This document shows positions 45 through 62,380 of a DNA stretch of 64,000 nucleotides, one piece after another. Under the pieces are notes generated by a model. It searched no databases and was not told the DNA's origin. It saw only the letters and a program-made list of their open reading frames with translations. The DNA lies in assembly GCA_021613535.1 (NCBI GenBank), contig CP075496.1, forward strand, positions 15,160,635 to 15,224,634. The letters run 5' to 3'. How positions within the stretch are numbered: the stretch's first letter is position 1; every line of letters begins with the position of its first letter. Both the position numbers and the translations under genes were made by a program. The stretch comes from Adineta vaga. Lineage: Eukaryota; Animalia; Rotifera.

Positions 45-2988
45 GTGTTCGAAAATTTAAACGAGTTTTACTTTTCAACAAAGGATTGTATATCTTCTGC
101 CAGTACAGATGGAACAGAAATTATCAATAAACTGGTTGAAATTAACGAGTTCGATGATGAAAATAGTCCGATAGATTCATCGGTAGTGAAAAATTTTCTT
201 AATAATCTCTCGGCTATTATTGATGCAGTAAATCATTTACAATCTAAGAAAAGTTCATTTTTATATCCTGGTAAGAAAAATAAATCCAGTTGTCGAGTTA
301 CTCTACCGTCATTTTTTCATAAAACAGCACTTACGGAACATTTGTTACTGATGGCTGATGATAATACAAATAGGTTTACCAAAGTTCCTTCGTCATTTTT
401 GGTCATTACATCTAGCTCCAGGATCGTACGAAGACACAAGTTATAAAAGATGTATTGAAATAGATTGTCCAAGTTCTGGTATGGCTTTATGCCACAACAG
501 AACACCATTATTCGCTCTAACCTTTTGTTCACAATTAATACAAAAGATATACATTCAATTAATAGATAGTGGTCAATGTATACTTGAAAAAGATGGTACA
601 TTCGATAGTAAAGAATGTATATATGAAGCTCAATTACTAATAGAATGCGTTCTTCAATTGCATAACTGTCTTTGTTGCAAATACACCATGACATATTTGC
701 TGATTCTCTTACATTATCTATTAAAAAGAAATCGATTGGAGAATTTCGCTGCCAGTTTCATCTGGACATTGAAATCTCACAATTTAAAGGAACATTATTA
801 TTCAACGATCAATAGAATATCTGATGATCAACCAGAAGAAGAAGAAAAAGAAGAACAAGAACAAGAACAAGAAAAAGTTTATAACGAAGTGAATATCATT
901 TCTGATACGATTAATTTTGAAATGGATCGTCTACAAGAAATTTTAAATCAATCTCATCGACATGATCAACATTTATACAGCAGTATTCTATCTCTTACTC
1001 ATATATGCTGGTTCACGTCTGATGTGCCATTAAAATGGCAATTATTCAAAACAGCTATTTAAGCGATGAATTTAATGTCCAATTCTATATTGAAAATACA
1101 TCTATTAAGTGTCATATTATCACATCCTTGTGTGACACCATTATTATCAACAGCGATTTTTCAAAGTCGAACATTGCAAGATGAATTTATAATGTCTATA
1201 AAACAATTATCATTCATTGAATCTCCTATGATTACATCGTTATTAATAGTACGTTGTTTTCCACATGCACACAATAATGACATTCGATCACAATTAGTTG
1301 ATATACTTTTTAAAAAATTTCATAATTTGAAAATATCCTCTTCTGAAGAAGCTGAAATCATTGGCGAAATTTTATCCACCTGTTCTGCGGCCAACCTTGA
1401 TCCATTATTTATTCAAGAGCAACAAAAACAATTGAGAATACGTAATATGAAATCTTGCATACATCTCAACAATCTCAATTCACCTATCAGCATACATTTT
1501 ACTCCTAGTCAACAGACAACATTAGCAGCGTACCATTTAGTTGAACTCGCTCATGATGTACAGAGACTAACATTTGGACAAAATATCTCAAGTTCGTCAG
1601 AACATTTATTAAATAGCGATGGAATTCTCACAGCATTACTAGCAACAAATATGACACAACAAATTCGATCAACCTCATTTGATCTAGAAAAAATCGATGA
1701 ACTACTTCAATCTTTCCAGGAGGTGACTCCTAATGCGGTACAGATTGTTCAAGAGTGGCTTTTATATGACAAAGATGAATAAAAAATACTGAGATATCAT
1801 GCTGCCCTTCTTCTATCCTATTCTAACATTTGGTCTGTCCTTGGTATAAATACTTTATGTGATATGTTATTGAGTAAACTCGACCGATTTCGACAACGAA
1901 CTGAATTTTTTATGCGAACACATACTATACCATGGCGGAGTTCGCAGCTTGGCTTAGATGTTTTTCTTGCACTAGCCGAAAAGCATTTCACTTTTGGAAC
2001 CATATCTCCTTATGCGTCGGTAGTAACATTTTTGGCATTTGAAAAACTTCAGATAGACGACATTGATCATCTTGTTGAATTGATGAAACGGGAAAAGCAT
2101 CAGATAGAAGCTGAACTAAAGGTATCAGAGAGTAAAGATAAGAATGTTCAGATGAATCAATCTTATATGAAAGTGCCACATACAGTTTCAACACCTGTTC
2201 TTTCTCATTTTATCAAAATGATCGAAAGTGAGATTGATGAAACAATGAAAGCAGAAACAGAAACATTGTCATCGGAAGCACAAGTACAATATATAGAACG
2301 TTTACTTAATGCGTCTATTTTTCACTGGACTACAGTGGGTACACAAGAAAGGATGTTTCTCGATATGGCTCAACGTATTTTAAATAATATTACAATCAAT
2401 GTCAGAATTCGTGCAATGATTGTATTTTCACTAGGTTATTGTAGCACTGGTGGTCTTCCTATTTTGCAAGCTGAAATTTTGAAGGTAGAATCTTTTGAAC
2501 TACTTCCGATTGCAGTTAGCTCCTACTGTTACTGTATCCGTAGAACCTATAACGCTCAAGACGATTCAGCAAGAACTATTATACAAAGCTCTTTAGAATC
2601 TATTATTAGTCTACTGAACCATTCTTCCGATGATGTTGCCCAAGCTGCAGCTGATGGATTAGCTAGTGTATATGCAGCATGGGATGATGGTTTAAGCGTT
2701 CTTCTAGATACTCTTCAGCATGATCATATTCGAGCATACACCGCTCTATTAAATGCAACAAAAGATTTGACAGACAATGCGATCAATCAAAAATGCGTAC
2801 ATCGAGCAGCTGAACTAATCGAACAATATTCATCATCTCTTCTACCACTTTTTCTTCTCGAATTATATCATAGTATCAAATATTTTCATACTTCAGTTCT
2901 TCTCATAAGATCACCGCCAGGATACCGAGGTATTAATGCAACTGTTGAAGTTGCAGCACTGCTTGTTCGAAAAATGCCTGCTGCTTGA
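45..2988 (+). pseudogene. Large helical (HEAT/ARM-like) protein gene, broken into 4 ORFs and cut at its 3' end by a telomeric hairpin
   Basis: Consecutive same-strand ORFs 45-446, 358-1062, 1066-1782 and 1864-2988 are separated by frameshifts or stops. The final stop is the TGA of TTGAGGGTGTGGG at 2985. The family is not recognised. Confidence 0.5.
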
Positions 2989-3056
2989 GGGTGTGGGTGT
3001 GGGTGGGTGTGGATGAGAGTTTGCTGATTAAAGATTAAGAACCCACACCCACCCTC
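2985..3056. repeat. Telomeric-repeat hairpin site 1
   Basis: TTGAGGGTGTGGGTGTGGGTGGGTGTGG-loop-ACCCACACCCACCCTC. Confidence 0.9.
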
Positions 3057-5181: not shown

Positions 5182-5314
5182 ATCTTGAGGGTGTGGGTGT
5201 GGGTGAGAAACAGTGGAATGATGACACCCTCAACCATCCTCACCCACACCCAACCCCTTACCCTCATCCTCACCCATACCCACACCCTCACACCCTCACC
5301 CTTACCCTCAAGAT
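5182..5314. repeat. Telomeric-repeat hairpin site 2 (long variant C-arm)
   Basis: ATCTTGAGGGTGTGGGTGTGGGTGAG ... mixed CCCTCA/CCCACA/CCCATA/CCCTTA units ... CCCTCAAGAT. Confidence 0.9.
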
Positions 5315-23546: not shown

Positions 23547-26500
23547 ATGACCAACTTTTGTCGTCAGACAATATCTTCTCTGAAAAATTATCTTTTGAAT
23601 CTCAATCTTTTCGAATCATCATCCAATAGTAATGAAACAGACGAACAACAACAACGTCGCTTCAATATTATTGTCACTCGTGTTTACTTAGTTGTTCTTA
23701 TATTTCTTCTCATTTATTACAGTTTTTTAATATGGTCAGATTTGGAAAAAATCCACATAACACTGTATAATTTCAATGAACAAGAGCTAAATGATTTGGC
23801 AATTGATGCAAATTGTCCTTGTTCTCGTATTTCACTATCATATGGTGAGTTTGTCTCATTAGAACCGATTTTACATCAAGTTTGCTCGAGTGATTTTGTG
23901 TCCGATCATTGGATTAAAGCCATTTATTCAAGTTCGAATTCTACGTATTTTAATTTGAATGACTTTCGTACATTTGGAAGTAGCCAATTTCAAGCTTTGG
24001 CTGGTTTTTGTAATCTATCACGTTCCTATCTTCAGCAAAATATTGATTCATTTAAACAAAGCATATTTTTCAATTCACAAATCTTATCAAAGACTACTTT
24101 TCAGAAGGTAGTACAATCAGCTATTGTTCAGTTTCAGCAGACCGTACCTCAAACATTTGCAACGGAATTAGATCTCATACGGCGACTAACAATAACCAAT
24201 CGACTTGTATCCGGACTTCAAACAAATTTTATTATAAAATATGATGACAGTGGCAACTATCTTACTACCAATACGTACAATAACTATAGTGAAACATCTT
24301 GTAACTGTCTATTAAATTTTCAGTGTACATCAAATGCTACCTATGATAGCATATTTGGAGCACCAACACAGGAATATTCTGAGAACATCAAGATACTACG
24401 TGGAATATCTTCGGGTTGTCTACCGGTGGATTCAATTCTTTCATCCACATTGAAATGTTTCTACAAACAGATATGTTTAGACGATCTTATCTCATTTTTT
24501 GCAACTGATAAACGATTCTTAGCAATGAAAATCAATAATAAAAGTCATTTTAGGTCATCTGCAACCGTACAATCAATCGTCGATCAATTGATGATAGAAG
24601 ATTGGATCATCAATATATCTTATCGAAAATATTTTAATAGTTGTGCCGCTCTTTCATGTACTTATTCAATAAGAAAACGATATAGTATGGTATATGTATT
24701 AATAAAGCTAGTTAGTTTTCTCAGCGGCTTGATATTAGTACTCAGACTCGTGATTCCAGCTATTGTTCGATTTATAATAGATAAATTAAATAATGTACAA
24801 TATCCAAAAATTCCTTGTAAGTAACTTGTTGTTATATTATATTCACTTGTGTACGATTTCGATTCTTAGTTTGTACTCGTATAATTCAAATAAAAGCGAA
24901 CGTGAAAAAATTAATCATTGAATTAAATACATTCGAATCTTTTCCTTGTAATGATCGACAAGTTCGATATCAACGCTATGCTACTCGATCGCGTATATTC
25001 TTGATCATTATTTCGGTAGCAATTGTAGCCGGATACATGCTGATGATTATATCAAGTCATCATCGTACTATTATAAATCCAACAGAATCGGAATATATTA
25101 ATCTTGAACAAACATATTCAACTGATCTCAATTGTTCATGTACTTCGACATCTATACCATATCTTTCTTTTATGACTATTAAATCTTGCAAACATCAGTT
25201 ATGCTCCAGTTATTTGATTACGCCACACTGGATTAACTACACTCATTCCGAGAGTCATCTTCTTATGTATATTCTTGACTATCGACAACAAGCTAGTAGT
25301 CAATTTCAAGCATTGGCAGTGCTTTGTGAACAGTCTCAAGCTGCATTCAATAATACACTCGATATTTTTCTTCGAACAGAGATTATTAATGCAAAAGTGA
25401 TTCGCCAAGAATTATTTAAAACTAAAATGAAGCAACTTATCAAAAGTTGGAAATCATTAATGATTAGTCAGTTTAGACAAAGAATAGAGCTTATTCGACA
25501 CACTACGTTTTTAAATCAACTAATGAATCGTAATAATATTTTCTTTCAGAGTGAAAGTACTGAAGGAAAAATAATTACGGAGCCTAGACGCTATGGTGAC
25601 TGCAGTTGTGGTTTGAATCGAACATGCCATGAATCTATGAAAATAGACCCTTATAAGCCAAATGATCATCTGCTAGTCTTTACGGTTCCTAATTTTTTCG
25701 TAGGTTGTTATCCTTTGGAAGCATTATTATTATCGACATTGGAATGTTTCTATAATCAATCATGTATGGAACAACTTTATTCATATTATCATGTACCTCT
25801 CCACAAATCGTGGACTCTTCCCGCACTCAATTCAAGTCTTAGTTCATCTAACGAAACAATTGAATCAATGGTCAATCAATTAATGATTGCTGAGTGGTTC
25901 GAAAATGTTAATTTTAGTTCTTACTATAATAAATGTGCTCCAAAATCATGTATCATCGAATACAATGCTCGCTATAGTCCCATGGCTATTATCAATATTG
26001 TTACTGGTGTTCTTGGTGGATTATCCCTTGGTTTACAAATGCTCATACGGTTGGCACTTTTTATTATCGAAAAACTGATCGCTGGGTTTTCTTTTCGATC
26101 ATTTTCAAAGTCGTTCTTAGAGCTTTTTGACTTCAGTGATGAGGAGAAATCGACGCATCTATTACATGTTATTGTTGTCATAGTGATTCTTTATGCCTTT
26201 TACATGCATCAAGCATTTGATTCTGACGTAATCAAAAAAGAAATAAGGAAACCGTCACGAACCATCTATGACAATTTGATTAAACAATATCCTGATTCTC
26301 TAAACTGTTCTTGCTCAGAATTATCCATTCAATATTATTCGTTTCTTAATATAACTGCTCATTTTCATCAAATATGCTCAAGAGATTTCGTTTCAGAAGC
26401 ATGGAATGTAGTTAACAGTAATTCATGGGTTTTGTTTTTGGGTATTGAGAAAAACTATGCGTATGCAGGTTTAGCACAATTACAAGCGATGGTTTCACTT

Positions 26501-27232
26501 TGTAAAATGTCTCAAGACATAGTACATGATTCACTTGATCAATTATTAACAAGTCATTTGGTCAATAATCAATTATTATCATTAACTTTATTGAAAGAAC
26601 ATATTCAAACACTTATTCATGATTTCAAAATACGAGTACCACAAACATTAATGAATATGTTTGCATTGATTCGCATGACAACAACGGCAAATAAATTGAT
26701 GGTCACATACGGTACCAGTTGGATATTTGCTTTTCCACCAACTAGAATTTCACATCATACTCTACACACAGTTACAACCGTTACATCAGACTGTAATTGT
26801 GCTTTGACTCCGAACTGTCTTATAAAAAATATTTTAGGAATACAAATTGGTTGTTATGTAACTGAAGCTGTCTGTCAATCAACAATTGAATGTCCCTACG
26901 ATCGACATTGCTTGGATTTAACGAATACTAGTCAACCATTAGATGACTCGATCGAACAGAGTCGTTTTCTTACGAATTCAACATTTGAATCAGTTTTCAA
27001 TGAATTGATGTTAGAAAAACTTGTCCATAATCTATCGTACGATGCTTATTTTAATCGTTGTGCACCCTCATTATGTACTCGTTCTTCGTCTAACGAAAGT
27101 AATATAATCAAAGGATTTACAGCATTGGTTTCTCTCTATGGTGGTGTGGTAATCATTGGAAAACTTGCTGCAGTAATCATCGTCAAACTGTTACGATGTC
27201 GATCAACTAGGGTTATAGCAACAGCGAATTAA
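23547..27232 (+). CDS. ~1200-aa multi-pass membrane protein with three Cys-rich extracellular modules (uncharacterised)
   Basis: ORFs 23547-24817 and 24870-27232 are joined in phase by a 52-nt GT-AG intron. The module TM-C.CS..SI.Y..F...HQ.CSS...W...C.C...GC...ST..C.Y...C...Y...CAP..C-TM occurs three times. Confidence 0.8.
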
Positions 27233-27437: not shown

Positions 27438-27496
27438 TGAAGAGTGGGTGTGGGTGTGGGTGAAGAAAAGAGTAATACTCACACCCACACCCTTCA
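27438..27496. repeat. Telomeric-repeat hairpin site 4
   Basis: GAGTGGGTGTGGGTGTGGGTGAAG-loop-CTCACACCCACACCCTTCA; abuts the transposase break. Confidence 0.9.
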
Positions 27497-33240: not shown

Positions 33241-33414
33241 AGCCTCGATCTTTCACAGATGATAAAACAGAACCTTCATCCGATTGACAAGTTGTTTTGC
33301 TTGTACCCTCCACAAATTGAGATCTGAAAAAAAAATACCTGACGACATTCAGATTTATTGTGAATCTTTGTGTGAATTGAATGGGAGTTTAGTGACATCG
33401 TGGGTAGAATACAG

Positions 33415-33442
33415 TGAGGGTGTGGGTGTGGGTGAGGGTGAG
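33415..33442. repeat. Telomeric tract site 5 (G-arm only), adjacent to a hammerhead
   Basis: TGAGGGTGTGGGTGTGGGTGAGGGTGAG. Confidence 0.85.
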
Positions 33443-33452
33443 TCAGAGCATC

Positions 33453-33496
33453 CCAAGACGCGTTTCGACTGTTGCTTAGGCAGTCTCATCAGTTGG
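33453..33496 (-). ncRNA. Minimal type I hammerhead ribozyme
   Basis: Minus strand: CCAA-CTGATGA-GACTG-CCTAAGCAA-CAGTC-GAAA-CGCGTC-TTGG. Perfect core, stems I and II, palindromic ACGCGT stem III. Confidence 0.9.
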
Positions 33497-33686
33497 TATA
33501 AATCAAATAACTTGAAAAACAGATTGACTTATTTTTAATCAAAGAAAAACAAGTTCAATCTGCTGGATTTCAACTTTTGCTTTTCAGCAATCGATATTTG
33601 TCGAATTATATAATAATAATAAATTTAATAACTTGAAAAATATTGTTAATGTGTTTATATTAATAAAAAATGTAGAATTTCACTTT

Positions 33687-33740
33687 GCCGACGCGTTTCG
33701 TGTTCGTTTATTTAGGAAATAAATTAACACTCTTCAGGGC
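33687..33740 (-). ncRNA. Minimal type I hammerhead ribozyme (second copy)
   Basis: Minus strand: GCC-CTGAAGA-GTGTT...TTTATTT..AAATAAA...AACAC-GAAA-CGCGTC-GGC. Confidence 0.85.
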
Positions 33741-34026
33741 TCTACATATTTTAAACACAGAAAGAAACTAGAGAAAAATATAGACAATAACAACGAAAAA
33801 TAAATGAAAGAAAGAAAGTAACTAAGCTTGAATAATAGAATAAATGCAAATATAATAAGTGCATGCGAATAAGAAAAAACAGAAGTAGAAAGGAATGAAA
33901 TTTGATAATATATGAATGATATTTAAAAATAAAGAAAAACATAGCATGATTGTGATAGATAATTAGTTGAATGTTATTGTTCAAGTATTATGAGTTTTAA
34001 CTAGACGTCGTTGAAGATTGTTAACA

Positions 34027-34094
34027 TGGGTGTGGGTGTGGGTGTGGGCTTCATTCCTCACCCACAGCCACGGTCACACCCACACCCGCAAGAT
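34027..34094. repeat. Telomeric-repeat hairpin site 6
   Basis: TGGGTGTGGGTGTGGGTGTGGG ... CACACCCACACCCGCAAGAT; coding-like sequence (RYNACP) starts right after it. Confidence 0.9.
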
Positions 34095-36247
34095 GCGTTA
34101 CAATGCTTGTCCAATATTTTTCTATGGTCCTCTTTTGGAAGCTTCTAAAGCAGCTTTTGATTCAAAAGATCTCAAAGAGGTTTATTTACATTCAATTTAT
34201 ATGAATATATTATTTTTTCTTACTTCACTATAGCATCGTCCAATCCTTGTCTACATACACAATGATAAGAGTATGTTGAATAACATATTTTGTAAAACGA
34301 CGCTTTGTGCAGAACTTATTATTGAGTATTTACAAGAAAACTACCTCGTTTGGCCATGGGATATAACTCTGCAATCAAATAGAAATCGATTGTTAACGAT
34401 TTGGAAAGAAATCTTTGTTTTTCCATTGTTAAGTGACTTTTCTGTAGATAAGTATCCTATGTTGTTTGGGATAACTCGTCGATTTCCAGTTAAGAAGTGT
34501 TGGTTACCTACAGTTCAATATGAGTTCACATCATTAGTTAAAGGTGATAAATTAATACGTACCCAAGAGACAATAACATTAAATGCTTTCTTGTCCGAAT
34601 TGATCGCATTCAAAGAAGAATGTGATTAAATCGAAAAAGCTTTGGTAAGTCTTTTCCTTAGCCTATCCGCAAAAAGTCCTGTTTTTCTCTGTAAAGATTC
34701 ACAATAGAGAAGAAGTAAATAGTGATCTTCAAATGGAGTCTTTTTTCCAATGTTTGGAAAAACGTTATCAAAATTGCCCGACATTCTTTACTGATTCACT
34801 TCAATATGGTTGTCAACTAACGCATAATTTGTCATTGAATAAAAAAGTTTGTTAAATACATATTCTATTACATCAAGATAAATTCTAACTCTCTTTCATT
34901 CTAGCGTCGTCCAGTGCTCATATTTGTACATGATGATAACAGTATACAAAATATAAATATCAATCCAATAGGTATTATTGATTATTTATTAGAAGATTTT
35001 AATGTCTGTCCATTCGACATCACTTCACAATCAGATCAACAAATGTAATAAAATGTTAGTTGATATGATAAATACCTTTCCTTGATTTATGTTATAGATT
35101 AAGGGTTATGTGGAATGAACTGTTCAATGCGCCTTTTCTTACAAAAGTTACCATTAGAAATTGTCCATTACTTTTTGGAGTAATGAGAATGTTTGATGAG
35201 ACAAATATTGATTCGAGCAAATCTAAATACCAAATCAAATTATTATTGGATAACGCTGTACGTACTCATAACACACTTATAGAACAGCTTCTTATTTTCA
35301 AACAAGAATGCAGTGCCAATGAAAAGGCTTTGGTGTGGATATTTATTCTTTATTAAAATATGATGGTTATGTTAAACATTTATTCGTCTGTTTTCCTTTA
35401 GGCTTGTGATTTTCTGAAGAATACTGGTTTTGATTGGCCGATTATTCTTGAAATCAGTCAATATTTAACATTAAATGATATGATCAACACGTTTTCGACG
35501 AAAATTATATCTGTATTATCAGAATTTCAGATCAAAGTTCATGTATCAGATCCATCTTATGCATTTATGAATATGATTAATCAAAAACTCCACCCTCGAC
35601 AAATTGCTTCTGTACAATTTAATACAGATTATCTCGAAAGAAGAAAAGATATACATTCTTGGCCGATTTTTCGCTGTGTTCAAAACTTAACATTTATTAA
35701 TCCTTCCGGTTCTCTTGACCTTGACAACTTTCCATATTATTTTCCCAGTTCGACAAATCTTTTGTTTCGATTCGATACAGAAGTCCAGTCTAATTCCTTC
35801 GATAATATACTGCATCGATTTCCAAGTACAATTACACGATTAACAATCACTACTACTGTACCTGTAGAGTTTTGTCGTTCTCAAACAACTCCAAATACTA
35901 CGATTGAATATTTTCGATTGGATATTAGTCGCCTTGTGTCATGTCCAATGGATCCGAGTATGAATTCGTATATTTCAGAACTGTTATTGGCATCAGTAGA
36001 ATTCATCTCTAAATTGCCTAATGTTCATTCGGTTTATTTCATAGTTAACAAACTTATTATTGAGAGATTGTTAGATATAAAACGCTGGGTATATGTAGTA
36101 GAGAAATGTTCTCAATTGAAGAAGGTGACAATGAAGGTTTCAGGAGATATGTCGCCGAACAATCCATTAACACAGACGAAATTACAAATACAAGAAGCTC
36201 TCTCAACTAGTCGACAAGAATTTCAATTTCAAGTTATATTTTCGTAA
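34095..36247 (+). pseudogene. 5'-truncated gene with duplicated UAS (FAF1-like thioredoxin-fold) modules and an F-box/LRR-like C-terminus
   Basis: RY..CP.F..GPL.EA...AF / RPILVYIHND....NIFC...LC....IEYL.ENYLVWPWDIT module appears twice, with short introns. Premature TAA at 34627. Confidence 0.6.
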
Positions 36248-37970: not shown

Positions 37971-38052
37971 TTGAGGGTGTGGGTGTGAGTAACAGAGACA
38001 CCCACACTCACTCACCCACACCCACACCCACAACCACCCACACCCTACAAGA
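37971..38052. repeat. Telomeric-repeat hairpin site 9
   Basis: TTGAGGGTGTGGGTGTGAG ... (CACCCA)n CACCCTACAAGA. Confidence 0.9.
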
Positions 38053-43208: not shown

Positions 43209-43302
43209 AGGTGTGGGTGTGGGTGGTCCTTACTGGATCGTTATCGACATCTTCATCCATACGCATACTCTCACCCACACCCACCTACACCCACACCCTC
43301 AA
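43209..43302. repeat. Telomeric-repeat hairpin site 14
   Basis: AGGTGTGGGTGTGGGTGG ... CTCACCCACACCCACCTACACCCACACCCTCAA. Confidence 0.9.
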
Positions 43303-58934: not shown

Positions 58935-61544
58935 ATGGAATTTCAAAAGTGTCGATACAATGATAAAATTGTAGAGATACCTGTTCGATATGTAAAAAAG
59001 AATAAATATTTATTCTTACAAGATGTTCATGATTATTTTATTGGTATTCGAAGATTTACAATTGACGAAGAGCTAATAGAATTCGAACAAGACAACAATA
59101 ATCAACTAATTTATCCACAACGAATTCCAGCTTCAACTCGATATGTAATCGATTGTCATACATCAATGTCTTCAGACAGTGCTATCTCATCAGAACGCAA
59201 CGTTTTAAATACAGTTGTAGATAATATTGAAATTCTTAAAACAAAACTCGATGTTATTCAACGTCAAATATATGAAACAGCAGAATACACCATACCCCAT
59301 CTTTTCATTGTATTACCGGTTGAAACACCTTCTTACAATCCTTCAAAATGGCTTCATTATAAATATCGTTTGCATTTTCTATGCGATTGTGCAAACGACA
59401 ATGAACGCCATTTTGCTCTTCATGATGGATATGAAATAAAGGAACCACGTGAATTCTTTCAGAAATATGGACCTTATCTTCGTAAGACGTTAACTGTAAT
59501 TAAATATATGGCATCCGTCGGAAGCATCGCTGTTCCACAACTATCATCGATCTTTACGAAATTACACAATATTAATATTTTACAAAAAAAGGAATTTTGG
59601 GATAATATTATTCATAAAGTAGAACAAACAGATGAGATTTTGGCGAAAGCTCAAACAAATATAAATATTTCAACCGAAAGAAATATTCAAGAAGGAAACG
59701 GTCCTGCATTACGGCAAATTCGAAAATATTTGAAAAAAGTAGATGAAAATGATACATTAGGAAATTTATACCGTACTGTTACATCTAATGGACAAGTTCG
59801 ATGGGTATGTATTGATCATTATAATAAACAACATTCAACTAATCGAATTAAACAATTCCGAAATGAATTTGAACGATTAGGTGGAAAAATAGAAGATAAT
59901 ATTGTTATCATAGATAAATTAAATGAAAAAGTTTTCTCAGAAATCAACAAATTATTAAATCAAGGTTTAACAATCGATACTATAAGTATCAAAGATGTCA
60001 AAATAACAGAAGATCTATTTTCAAAATTTCTCAATATTATTTCAAGAAAAATTAGAATTAATAAACTTAAATTAGAAAACATTTTCCTGACAAATTTTAG
60101 AATAAAAACTTCGAAACAAAAAATCATTTCAATGCTTAATGATGCATTAGAAAGCAATCGTCAACTTATCATTGAATATACATTTACAAAATTAATGGAC
60201 AAATTTCAATCAAAATTTTTCGATACTATTAAAGAAACAAATTCGCGATTGAAATTCACCATTCAACCAGAAGAAATAGAATCTTCATTTAAATTATTTG
60301 GAACAAATGAAACTGGATTTGTTCTATCTTTAGAAAGTATTGACGAAAAAAGTATTAAAAATATCTTTCAACAATTGAACATATCAACACTTCATTTACA
60401 GAATGCAGATCTTTCCGACAATCTATGGAATACTATTCTTACTTTCGCTATTAACAGTCGAACTCTCGAAGAAATTACTATAGATTATAATGTAATACCA
60501 GTTACAACTCAAAAACAGATATTTCATCTTTGTGAAAATAGAAATTTAAAAACATTACATATGAAGAATGTACAAATGGGTGTCTGTGAAAAAATCTTTC
60601 GAATGTTAAAAAATCAAAATACTTTGGAAACATTTTCTTTGACATCATCTACTTATTATCTTGAAATAGATTTTAGTTCTATATTATCAGAAAATGATCA
60701 ATCAATGTTCAGTTCATCTGTTAAATGGCATACTAATGAAAATAATAATATGAAAATTATTACAAATCTTCTTCAAATCATTCCAGTTCAACAATTGACA
60801 TTGGAATTAGTGCATACTGATTGTGATACATCACTTAAACAATTAGCAGAAACTATTAATCAACTATCATCATTAAAAATTCTAGAACTTAAAAACAAAA
60901 TTGGTTATGCAATTTTTTATCAAGAAAAACGAATTTTTAGAACAAGAAGTAATGTACTTAAACCACAGTTACTCCCTGCACAAGTTAAGAAACCTTCTCT
61001 GCGCAAAAGACTGAGAAAATCTCTATTGTTTCTTAGTTGTATTAGTCCTAAACGTTCCCATTCTTCTCAAATAGAAACTACTGAACCCGTACAGTCTCTT
61101 AGAGAAATCGAAGTATCTGATCAATCTTTCTCTCAAAGTTTCTCACATCCACTTTACAAACATATACAAGAAATTGCATTAAACTTTACATTAAAACAAT
61201 TACAAATCAATATTAATCGTGATATAAATATAAGTCATCTTGTTTCGGATATACAATCAAATTCAACAGTATCTCATCTACGATTTGCTGGACAAATACG
61301 AGAAAATGATATGACAACATTAATTAAAGCTGTTCGTAAAAATACGATAATATCTCATTTATCTTTGAGAGAAATTGAGATTTCATTTACTAATCTTCGG
61401 CAAATCTTTGATGTATTCTATGATAATCAAAACTTAAACGTATTAGAAATTCATCCTTGTACATCGGATACTGATCGAGAGTTATTTCAACAAGAAATTA
61501 ATAAGGCACGCTCTGAAAATCGTACTTTGCAAGTTTTATTTTGA
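58935..61544 (+). CDS. 869-aa intronless protein: COR/Roco-associated-like domain plus RNI-like LRR region
   Basis: PHLFIVLP, YRLHFLCDC, HDGYEIKEPREFFQKYGPYL and LGNLYRTVTSNGQVRWVCIDHY, followed by degenerate LRRs. Confidence 0.7.
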   Translation: MEFQKCRYNDKIVEIPVRYVKKNKYLFLQDVHDYFIGIRRFTIDEELIEFEQDNNNQLIYPQRIPASTRYVIDCHTSMSSDSAISSERNVLNTVVDNIEILKTKLDVIQRQIYETAEYTIPHLFIVLPVETPSYNPSKWLHYKYRLHFLCDCANDNERHFALHDGYEIKEPREFFQKYGPYLRKTLTVIKYMASVGSIAVPQLSSIFTKLHNINILQKKEFWDNIIHKVEQTDEILAKAQTNINISTERNIQEGNGPALRQIRKYLKKVDENDTLGNLYRTVTSNGQVRWVCIDHYNKQHSTNRIKQFRNEFERLGGKIEDNIVIIDKLNEKVFSEINKLLNQGLTIDTISIKDVKITEDLFSKFLNIISRKIRINKLKLENIFLTNFRIKTSKQKIISMLNDALESNRQLIIEYTFTKLMDKFQSKFFDTIKETNSRLKFTIQPEEIESSFKLFGTNETGFVLSLESIDEKSIKNIFQQLNISTLHLQNADLSDNLWNTILTFAINSRTLEEITIDYNVIPVTTQKQIFHLCENRNLKTLHMKNVQMGVCEKIFRMLKNQNTLETFSLTSSTYYLEIDFSSILSENDQSMFSSSVKWHTNENNNMKIITNLLQIIPVQQLTLELVHTDCDTSLKQLAETINQLSSLKILELKNKIGYAIFYQEKRIFRTRSNVLKPQLLPAQVKKPSLRKRLRKSLLFLSCISPKRSHSSQIETTEPVQSLREIEVSDQSFSQSFSHPLYKHIQEIALNFTLKQLQININRDINISHLVSDIQSNSTVSHLRFAGQIRENDMTTLIKAVRKNTIISHLSLREIEISFTNLRQIFDVFYDNQNLNVLEIHPCTSDTDRELFQQEINKARSENRTLQVLF

Positions 61545-62335: not shown

Positions 62336-62380
62336 TTGAGGGTGTGGGTGTGATTCAAGTAGAAATACACTCACACCCTT
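62336..62380. repeat. Telomeric-repeat hairpin site 22
   Basis: TTGAGGGTGTGGGTGTGA ... ACACTCACACCCTT. Confidence 0.9.

What the first reader, a model, noticed from the sequence alone, without database searches (positions are those of the whole stretch)
33415..34026. Tandem hammerhead ribozymes ending in a telomeric tract
Seen: two minus-strand type I hammerheads ~234 nt apart with different stems I/II but the same palindromic ACGCGT stem III. The downstream one is followed ~10 nt later by CTCACCCTCACCCACACCCACACCCTCA. Known: minimal hammerheads with palindromic loop III work as dimers in Penelope-like pLTRs and retrozymes, and bdelloid Athena/Terminon elements attach to telomeres via 3' telomeric-complementary repeats. 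Inference: this is a Terminon/retrozyme-like end. It is a candidate link between an RNA-templated mechanism and the hairpin sites, and it marks where their density rises sharply.
Basis: partly seen in the sequence, partly recalled or inferred. Interest (0 to 1): 0.8.

Follow-up and report, generated by a model that had tools for sequence, protein, structure and literature searches.

The report
Truncated Athena retroelement tail with hammerheads
This is a 0.6-kb broken-off tail of a known telomere-attaching jumping gene (Athena type) of bdelloid rotifers, with two intact-looking hammerhead ribozyme motifs and a telomere-complementary end; it is a real but ordinary fossil of an old chromosome end.

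Summary
Two complete hammerhead cores lie on the minus strand, with cleavage sites after 33690 and 33457, 233 nt apart. Both have the palindromic helix III ACGCGU. The second is followed 14 nt later by a 28-nt C-rich telomeric tract (33442-33415). Chance is excluded: 0 matches in shuffles, and 44 matches genome-wide against 0 for the reversed control.

The details differ:
- The two ribozymes are not a tandem repeat. They belong to two different lineages.
- The upstream one belongs to the 3'UTR of an endonuclease-less Penelope-like reverse transcriptase family. That UTR also carries two conserved hairpins and is conserved in three other bdelloid genera, where it normally ends directly in the telomeric tail.
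- The downstream one is the usual terminal hammerhead of other Athena families, joined exactly at that UTR's end.
- The copy is 5'-truncated 13 codons before the stop and capped by telomere repeats. It lies 30.5 kb from the assembled end of chromosome 4.
- There is no RT gene, Terminon body, pLTR or repeat unit in the window.
- The two motifs cannot form a canonical double hammerhead with each other.
- No RNA evidence was found.

Earlier notes of this scan reached the same verdict for similar tails elsewhere in this genome.

The parts
34028..34048 (-). 5' cap of the truncated element: 21 nt of (CCCACA)-type telomeric repeat on the element's sense strand, i.e. G-strand repeats on the + strand pointing towards the chromosome end
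33981..34024 (-). Remnant of the RT ORF: the last 13 codons plus the stop (34022-33981, NNLQRRLVKTHNT*). Homology to the other copies starts here.
   Evidence: Alignment with copies L002 and L003; ORF C-termini of the family copies; codons read
33748..33980 (-). AT-rich, indel-prone part of the 3'UTR
33670..33747 (-). Upstream ('B-type') hammerhead, core 33737-33690 with GUC ending at 33690. It has a long AU-rich stem II. Stem I is 3 bp, then a 10-nt bulge on the 3' strand, then 7 bp.
33577..33590 (-). HP1: a 5-bp hairpin with a GAAA loop, almost invariant in the family
33519..33563 (-). HP2: a hairpin of about 12 bp with compensatory changes between copies
33496..33518 (-). Canonical 3' end of this UTR family (ending GATTTAYAC). 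In other copies it is followed directly by the telomeric tail.
33443..33496 (-). Downstream ('A-type') hammerhead module, core 33492-33457 with GUC ending at 33457. Stem I is CCAA/UUGG and stem II is GACUG/CAGUC. This is the terminal hammerhead type of other Athena families.
33415..33442 (-). Reverse-complement telomeric tail (TCACCC/ACACCC units), at the junction with older chromosomal DNA at 33414/33415
   Evidence: bridged by 2013 DNA contigs
34049..34095 (.). A 7-nt spacer (34049-34055) and the opposing, degenerate telomeric arm (34056-34095). The arm caps a gene fragment that starts at 34096 and is truncated relative to its paralogs on chromosome 3.

Best explanation
The stretch 34048-33415 (minus strand) is a fossil of terminal retrotransposition by endonuclease-deficient Penelope-like (Athena-type) elements onto a former end of chromosome 4.

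Proposed history (inferred):
1. The chromosome once ended at 33414/33415, about 63 bp upstream of where transcript contigs of the neighbouring chitin-oxidase (AA11 LPMO) gene stop.
2. That end carried G-strand telomere repeats.
3. An Athena RNA annealed to the overhang through its C-rich 3' tail, and the chromosomal 3'-OH primed reverse transcription.
4. The product is composite. The last 54 nt (the A-type hammerhead module) come from one Athena lineage. Directly upstream lie the complete 3'UTR and the last 13 codons of another RT family. This arose either by a template switch at the 5' edge of the hammerhead fold, or by stacking of a second element on a severely truncated first one, or from a chimeric read-through master copy.
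5. Synthesis stopped early, and telomerase capped the truncated 5' end with about 3.5 repeats.
6. This end was later joined head-to-head to another telomere-capped DNA fragment. It now lies 30.5 kb inside the assembly.

The hammerheads are minimal type I motifs without a helix III hairpin. As monomers they are expected to fold (stems I and II) but not to cleave. By the published model the terminal fold presents the adjacent tail to the telomeric overhang. Cleavage would need a like partner, as in tandem arrays or in trans.

Shown here: the anatomy, the family membership, the conservation and the chromosomal position. Inferred: the order of events and the role of the ribozyme folds.
For: Motifs:
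- Both cores are complete and beyond chance.
- There are 44 genomic copies against 0 for the control, concentrated near chromosome ends.
- Of the 28 short-stem-II motifs binned as A-type (two of them, L021 and L074, I later moved to the B-type), 20 have a C-rich telomeric word within 40 nt downstream, against 0 of the 14 long-stem-II B-type motifs.

Pairing and covariation:
- A-type stem I has 4.15 contiguous bp natively against 1.67 when partners are crossed between copies. There are 20 distinct stem II helices among 26 copies.
- B-type: 88.7% of cells are paired against 24-52% when the partner is slid, and 4 pairs show compensatory change.

The RT family:
- The B unit is the 3'UTR of a 642-aa ORF with DKS, RPIIS, AMGSP and FIDD motifs and no endonuclease domain, preceded by a 226-aa ORF1.
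- Pfam RVT_1 is only sub-threshold.
- All named homologues among the 120 listed are from bdelloid rotifers; many rows carry no name.
- The same hammerhead, two hairpins and telomeric tail follow the orthologous RT in Adineta ricciae, Rotaria magnacalcarata and Didymodactylos carnosus.

This copy:
- It starts 13 codons before the stop, directly after a (CCCACA) cap.
- The window is the last 64 kb of contig C4.
- Contigs of a 2013 DNA run bridge tail, A-type hammerhead and the end of the B unit, in what look like two allelic forms.

Literature:
- Athena primes on exposed chromosome ends and is 5'-capped by telomeric repeats (PMC3846280).
- Terminon/Athena 3' ends are a hammerhead immediately followed by (ACACCC)n or (TCACCC)n (PMC6431247, PMC8557442).
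- The A. vaga telomere repeat is TGTGGG (PMC7943196).
Against: - No Rfam hammerhead model matches, and self-cleavage is untested.
- Published minimal PLE hammerheads cleave poorly in vitro (PMC4209133).
- The origin of the composite junction is unresolved. A second locus (C1, 16.34 Mb) also has a B unit followed, 270 nt later, by the same A subtype. This could mean a native recombinant subfamily rather than a one-off template switch.
- I could not name the Athena family, because Arkhipova et al. 2017 and Gladyshev & Arkhipova 2007 are not held and no reference Athena sequences were available for comparison.
- Assignment of the RT to the Athena clade rests on motifs, the lack of an endonuclease, the telomeric tails and the taxon range, not on a phylogeny.
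Confidence: 0.9

Rival explanations
1. A retrozyme-like non-autonomous element. [quoted passage not shown] A host ligase circularises it, and Athena RT mobilises it.
For: - Two complete cores with an identical palindromic helix III lie 233 nt apart, within the 150-300 bp size range of metazoan retrozymes (PMC7761336).
- The MFE fold of the 346-nt RNA pairs the two ACGCGU segments with each other.
- The excised piece would contain the conserved hairpins HP1 and HP2.
Against: - There is no repeated unit, and the two ribozymes are of different families.
- A double hammerhead needs stem I to be swapped between partners. Here the swapped strands give 0 of 8 and 1 of 8 pairs (read).
- In three other genera the same UTR has only the upstream hammerhead.
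- No RNA holder was found, and no RNA-like contig covers the unit.
- Real 216-bp tandem hammerhead arrays exist elsewhere in this genome and look different.
Confidence: 0.05
2. A native recombinant Athena subfamily whose genuine 3'UTR carries both hammerheads (internal B-type and terminal A-type). The window copy would be a simple single 5'-truncated insertion rather than two additions or a template switch.
For: - A second locus on C1 has a B unit followed by the same ACUG-stem-II A subtype and a tail.
- There are no telomeric repeats between the B unit and the A module in either locus.
Against: - The copies with the longest open RT frames, and the copies in three other genera, end the UTR at GATTTAC or close variants, with the tail or unrelated sequence following directly and no A-type motif.
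- The closest relatives of the window copy (84% and 82% identity) diverge from it exactly at the end of the B unit, and have no significant similarity to the A module.
- In the C1 locus, 270 nt of unrelated sequence intervene.
Confidence: 0.2
3. Chance resemblance: AT-rich non-coding DNA that happens to contain hammerhead-like words next to a degenerate interstitial telomeric tract.
For: No Rfam hammerhead hit.
Against: - 0 hits in shuffles.
- 44 against 0 genome-wide.
- Covariation in the stems.
- Conservation in four genera at the same place after the same RT gene.
Confidence: 0.01

Closest known systems
Athena, the endonuclease-deficient Penelope-like retroelements of bdelloid rotifers (Gladyshev & Arkhipova 2007; summarised in PMC3846280, PMC8557442)
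   Same: - Family copies encode an RT with PLE motifs and no endonuclease.
- The 3' end has reverse-complement telomeric repeats.
- The 5' truncation is capped by telomeric repeats.
- The location is subtelomeric.
- A minimal type I hammerhead sits next to the tail.
   Different: - The window copy keeps only 13 codons of the RT.
- Its tail region is a composite of two lineages.
- In the RT family concerned, the hammerhead normally lies about 180-190 nt upstream of the tail, with two conserved hairpins between, rather than immediately next to it.
Terminons, giant Athena-RT elements of up to 40 kb (Arkhipova et al. 2017; reviewed in PMC6431247)
   Same: The terminal module, a hammerhead fold followed at once by (ACACCC)n or (TCACCC)n, is the one described for Terminon 3' ends.
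   Different: No Terminon body is present: no RT, GDSL, DEDDy, Rep or other accessory ORF is contiguous with the unit, which is only about 0.63 kb.
Minimal PLE hammerheads that act as dimers (Cervera & de la Pena 2014, PMC4209133; Lunse et al. 2017, cited in PMC7761336)
   Same: - Complete core.
- Helix III reduced to a short palindrome.
- Predicted to need a second copy. A homodimer of the upstream motif is predicted to fold as a double hammerhead.
   Different: - The motifs are not in pLTRs or tandem copies here.
- The two motifs are not compatible partners for each other.
- The upstream motif has an unusually long, bulged stem I and a long stem II.
Metazoan non-LTR retrozymes (PMC7761336)
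   Same: Type I hammerheads a few hundred nucleotides apart in AT-rich non-coding DNA.
   Different: - No tandem repeat unit, and the hammerheads are not identical.
- No circRNA evidence.
- A real 216-bp tandem array with identical hammerheads exists elsewhere in this genome (C3, 20.277 Mb).

Membership tests
Hammerhead ribozyme, type I (minimal, PLE type) | Conserved core CUGANGA ... GAAA ... UH in the right order | tested here: met
   Both motifs have every core position, with GUC at the cleavage site.
Hammerhead ribozyme, type I (minimal, PLE type) | Stems I and II that pair and covary among copies | tested here: met
   The covariation is modest because the copies are related. Native pairing is far above the slid and crossed controls.
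Hammerhead ribozyme, type I (minimal, PLE type) | Match to a curated covariance model (Rfam hammerhead families) | tested here: not met
   No hit at gathering score or at E up to 10. I attribute this to the absence of a helix III hairpin.
Hammerhead ribozyme, type I (minimal, PLE type) | Self-cleavage after H17 | not testable with these tools
   No RNA reads cover the unit. An in vitro assay is needed.
Athena (EN-deficient Penelope-like element) | PLE-type RT without a GIY-YIG endonuclease | tested here: met
   Met for the family, not for this copy. The 642-aa ORF has DKS, RPIIS, AMGSP and FIDD motifs and ends without an endonuclease. Named homologues are all from bdelloids. The window keeps only 13 codons and has no RT. 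No phylogeny was made.
Athena (EN-deficient Penelope-like element) | 3' end with reverse-complement telomeric repeats | tested here: met
   The tract at 33442-33415. The same is seen in other copies and other genera.
Athena (EN-deficient Penelope-like element) | 5' truncation capped by telomeric repeats; location at or near chromosome ends | tested here: met
   The cap at 34048-34028 directly precedes the truncated ORF. The window is the terminal 64 kb of C4.
Terminon | Multi-kb unit with an Athena RT and accessory ORFs upstream of the terminal hammerhead | tested here: not met
   tblastn of the RT and ORF1 against the window finds nothing. The unit is bounded by telomeric repeats 0.63 kb apart.
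Retrozyme / pLTR tandem hammerheads | Direct repeat units, each carrying the same hammerhead | tested here: not met
   No repeat unit. The two motifs differ in stems I and II and in their flanks.
Retrozyme / pLTR tandem hammerheads | Circular or unit-length RNA | tested here: inconclusive
   No RNA run holds the stretch, and the RNA-like runs laid were contigs only.

The most novel reading that the evidence does not exclude
The 3'UTR of this RT family is conserved across four bdelloid genera. It has a bulged-stem-I hammerhead, a GAAA-loop hairpin, a covarying 12-bp hairpin and a short conserved 3' end, followed by the C-rich tail. This could be a dedicated RT-recognition and template-boundary module, analogous to the boundary helix plus template of telomerase RNA. 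It has no Rfam family, and I could not check the primary Athena and Terminon papers for it. The window copy would then capture a template switch between two Athena lineages exactly at the edge of the terminal hammerhead fold, showing that the fold is a strong stop or exchange point for the RT.
Probability: 0.2. Interest if true: 0.5.

Novelty: already known. Interest (0 to 1): 0.2.

Why it matters
As a finding it mainly confirms published biology: bdelloid chromosome ends are built from healed breaks, short telomere tracts and Athena tails that carry hammerhead motifs.

Its modest value lies in three points:
- It is a clean dated marker. The arm of this head-to-head telomeric junction was once a working chromosome end, because a telomere-dependent retroelement attached to it.
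- It shows two hammerhead lineages joined at a fold boundary.
- It points to a conserved two-hairpin 3'UTR module that could be tested as the RT's binding site.

The in vivo role of these minimal hammerheads is still called a mystery in the literature (PMC7761336), so a cleavage test would be informative for the family, though not specifically for this copy.

Tried and rejected
- **Rfam scans.** The whole window at gathering score and the region at E up to 10 gave no hammerhead hit, only chance microRNA-like hits on the telomeric palindrome and the hairpins.
- **A decayed A-type hammerhead in L002.** By eye, the closest copy (L002) seemed to carry one at the same place. Local alignment against shuffles gave z = -1.4, so I dropped the idea.
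- **RNA evidence.** No run on record as RNA holds the stretch. The RNA-like runs laid were contigs and cover only the neighbouring gene, up to 33352. This is no proof of silence.
- **Protein naming.** Pfam gives only a sub-threshold RVT_1 for the RT, and the PDB sequence search gave nothing relevant.
- **Simple break-and-rejoin origin.** The relatives of the left flank (C5) and the right flank (C3) lie on different chromosomes, so the two flanks were not ancestrally contiguous.
- **Cis heterodimer of the two hammerheads.** Rejected on base-pairing geometry.
- **Papers not held.** Arkhipova et al. 2017, Gladyshev & Arkhipova 2007 and Lunse et al. 2017 were not available. What I say of them comes from reviews that cite them.
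- **Limits reached.** No covariance model of my own was built.

Full report
**What is there**

Read on the minus strand, the stretch has this order:
- a 21-nt (CCCACA)-type tract (34048-34028);
- three bases, then sequence homologous to other genomic copies, starting at about 34024;
- an open frame of 13 codons and a stop (34022-33981);
- an AT-rich non-coding stretch;
- a first hammerhead (core 33737-33690);
- about 180 nt containing two hairpins;
- a second hammerhead (core 33492-33457);
- 14 nt, then a 28-nt C-rich tract (33442-33415).

Both hammerheads have every conserved core position, GUC at the cleavage site, and GAAA-CGCG-UC. Helix III is therefore reduced to the palindrome ACGCGU. 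The cleavage sites are 233 nt apart.

**Is it more than chance?**

- The descriptor with this helix III matches only these two places in 64 kb and none in 100 shuffles.
- A looser descriptor of my own (any palindromic helix III, stems I and II of at least 3 bp) gives the same two and none in 50 shuffles.
- In the whole genome the pattern occurs 44 times against 0 for the reversed control.
- Rfam's hammerhead models do not hit, even at E up to 10. I attribute this to the missing helix III hairpin. It is recorded as a membership feature that was not met.

**Where it lies**

The genome has 100.8 Mb in 6 contigs, and the window is the last 64 kb of contig C4. It is a bdelloid rotifer:
- the telomeric hexamer TGTGGG is the one reported for Adineta vaga (PMC7943196);
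- the named relatives of the RT family described below are all from Adineta, Rotaria and Didymodactylos.

Most likely it is A. vaga, but that is my inference from assembly size and chromosome number. G-strand repeats on the + strand at 33415-33442 and 34028-34048 point towards the contig end, as expected if the element's sense strand is the minus strand.

**Two kinds of hammerhead**

The 44 genomic motifs fall into two classes.

A-type:
- Core span of 33-37 nt, with a short stem II of many different sequences.
- Stem I of 4-9 bp that covaries (CCAA/UUGG, GCCAU/AUGGC, UCAA/UUGA and others).
- Native stems average 4.15 contiguous pairs, against 1.67 when 5' and 3' strands are crossed between copies. 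There are 20 distinct stem II helices in 26 copies.
- Of the 28 motifs binned as A-type by length (two of which, L021 and L074, I later moved to the B-type), 20 are followed within 40 nt by C-rich telomeric words. None of the 14 binned as B-type is.
- The tail starts 11-15 nt after GUC, right after the 3' strand of stem I.
- The window's downstream motif is of this type.

B-type:
- Core span of 38-48 nt, with a long AU-rich stem II.
- Stem I is 3 bp, then a bulge of about 10 nt on the 3' strand, then 7 bp.
- 88.7% of cells are paired, against 24-52% with slid partners. Four pairs show compensatory change, for example GUAGAG/CUCUAC against GCAGAG/CUCUGC.
- The window's upstream motif is of this type.

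**What the B-type belongs to**

In many copies the B unit follows an ORF that ends ...ILGTRN..NLQ..LV.TR*. Copies with long open frames encode a 642-aa protein with DKS, RPIIS, AMGSP and FIDD motifs and a conserved C-terminal region, but no endonuclease domain. A 226-aa ORF1 precedes it. Pfam RVT_1 is only sub-threshold.

There are at least 99 matches in the genome, nearly all in the outer parts of chromosomes. All named homologues among the 120 listed are from bdelloid rotifers.

These are the properties of Athena, the endonuclease-deficient Penelope-like elements. According to the literature they prime on exposed chromosome ends and are then capped by telomeric repeats at their truncated 5' end (PMC3846280, PMC8557442).

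The window has no RT (tblastn). It keeps only the last 13 codons, directly after the telomeric cap. It is therefore a severely 5'-truncated copy, not a Terminon.

**A conserved 3'UTR**

Downstream of the B-type hammerhead the family has three features:
- an almost invariant 5-bp hairpin with a GAAA loop (window 33590-33577);
- a hairpin of about 12 bp with clear compensatory changes (window 33563-33519): 93.5% paired against 30-54% slid, with G-C to A-U exchanges at two positions in 7 sequences each;
- a short conserved 3' end (ending GATTTAYAC), after which several copies go straight into the telomeric tail.

The same order follows the orthologous RT in Adineta ricciae, Rotaria magnacalcarata and Didymodactylos carnosus. 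The Didymodactylos copy ends in a clear telomeric tail, the Rotaria copy ends at the conserved 3' end, and the printed Adineta ricciae stretch stops inside the second hairpin. None of the printed stretches has a terminal A-type hammerhead. This module has no Rfam match.

**The composite end**

In the window the B-family UTR runs to its normal end at 33496/33497. There, where relatives have the tail, the 54-nt A-type module begins, with at most 1-2 shared bases at the joint.

The two closest copies (84% and 82% identical) diverge from the window exactly at this point. They have no significant similarity to the A module.

A-type hammerheads elsewhere sit at the 3' ends of more distant Athena families, whose RTs are 31-42% identical to the B-family RT. 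Examples are C3 at 2.16 Mb and C3 at 20.28 Mb.

One other locus (C1, 16.34 Mb) has a B unit followed, after 270 unrelated bases and no telomeric repeat, by the same A subtype and a tail.

I see three possible origins and cannot separate them:
- a template switch of the RT at the 5' edge of the hammerhead fold;
- a second element stacked on a first one that was truncated to its last 54 nt;
- a chimeric read-through master copy.

**Can the two motifs work together?**

In a double hammerhead the two helix III palindromes pair, and each stem I is formed by the 5' strand of one copy with the 3' strand of the other. This follows from the topology shown for tandem copies in PMC4209133.

With the window's two motifs, the swapped strands give 0 of 8 and 1 of 8 pairs, against 3 of 3 and 4 of 4 for the native stems (read).

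ViennaRNA predicts three things:
- The B-type monomer folds into stems I and II.
- Two B copies fold into a textbook double hammerhead.
- In the 346-nt natural RNA the two ACGCGU segments can pair, but within a fold that buries part of the B core.

So the pair is not a functional dimer by canonical rules. True tandem hammerheads do exist in this genome: a 216-bp unit repeated 2.6 times at 99% identity, next to 216 bp of telomere repeats at C3 20.277 Mb, and a pair 216 bp apart at the left end of C4.

**Expression**

No run on record as RNA holds the stretch. In the runs laid, all of them contigs, RNA-like contigs cover the neighbouring gene up to 33352 and stop, and none covers the unit.

Contigs of a 2013 DNA run bridge 33285-33513 in two forms, one nearly identical and one with 7 differences. 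I take these to be two alleles. The junction of tail, A module and B end is therefore not an assembly artefact.

Absence of RNA contigs does not show silence.

**The link to the 'hairpin sites'**

The cap at 34048-34028 is one arm of a head-to-head telomeric junction. The other arm (34056-34095) caps a gene fragment starting at 34096. That fragment's paralogs on C3 continue with further shared sequence that the window lacks.

The relatives of the left flank lie on C5 and those of the right flank on C3, so the two sides were not neighbours before.

The Athena tail inside the left arm shows that this arm was a real, extendable chromosome end before the two ends were joined.

Telomeric tracts are about four times denser distal to the finding. 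Earlier notes of this scan describe the same junction family and the same kind of Athena tail elsewhere in this genome.

**Verdict**

The feature is real, correctly recognised in kind, and already known: an Athena-type 3' end with a hammerhead plus a telomere-complementary tail. It is not a tandem pair, a pLTR, a retrozyme or a Terminon. The composite of two hammerhead lineages and the conserved two-hairpin UTR module are the only points that may go beyond what the reviews I could read describe.

Noticed in passing
window 33577-33590 and 33519-33563; also L086, L087, L088 downstream of the RT stop: A conserved two-hairpin module lies between the upstream hammerhead and the telomeric tail of this RT family: a GAAA-loop hairpin plus a covarying 12-bp hairpin. 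It is present in four bdelloid genera and has no Rfam match.
   Followed up: partly
window 34049-34095 and about 15 further sites (e.g. 2985-3053, 5185-5311, 27449-27496, 37971-38047, 43212-43302, 62336-62376): These are head-to-head telomeric junctions: a G-strand tract, a short spacer, then a C-strand tract. Many start with the leader TTGAGGG and end with its mirror CCCTCAA, often followed by GAT. At 34096 the junction caps a gene fragment truncated relative to its paralogs on C3.
   Followed up: partly
window 33352-33414: Transcript-like contigs of the neighbouring minus-strand AA11 LPMO gene end at 33352, only 63 bp from the telomeric tail. Whatever promotes this gene must therefore lie in or next to the retroelement tail. 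The first ATG, followed by an intron, lies at about 33346-33344.
   Followed up: no
L055 1483-2039 (C3, about 20.277 Mb) and C4 2721-2970: True tandem arrays of a 216-bp unit, each with an identical A-type hammerhead (99% identity, 2.6 copies). The terminal copy runs into 216 bp of telomere repeats. This is a retrozyme-like or pLTR-like arrangement downstream of a distant Athena RT.
   Followed up: partly
L006 (C1, about 15.818 Mb), downstream of the B unit; L013 (C6, about 0.11 Mb): These loci carry hammerhead-like modules with other helix III palindromes (ACCGGU, ACAUGU). Their cores are mutated at positions thought essential (UUGA.AAG or CUGUCGA instead of CUGAUGA). Some are followed by telomeric words, so they are probably decayed terminal hammerheads.
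   Followed up: no
window 23547-27232 and 58935-61544: Three long ORFs (425, 776 and 869 aa) have no Pfam match. Other ORFs nearby match GH19 chitinase, M1 peptidase, NHL repeats, ADP-ribosyltransferase, and Sel1/TPR with a HEPN domain. The region is a patchwork of unrelated gene pieces between telomeric junctions.
   Followed up: no
C4 2721-2970 (L059): At the extreme left end of contig C4, the Athena tail and its long telomeric tract point towards coordinate 1. This is the opposite of what terminal addition at a left telomere predicts, so the assembled left end may be inverted or may not be the true terminus.
   Followed up: no
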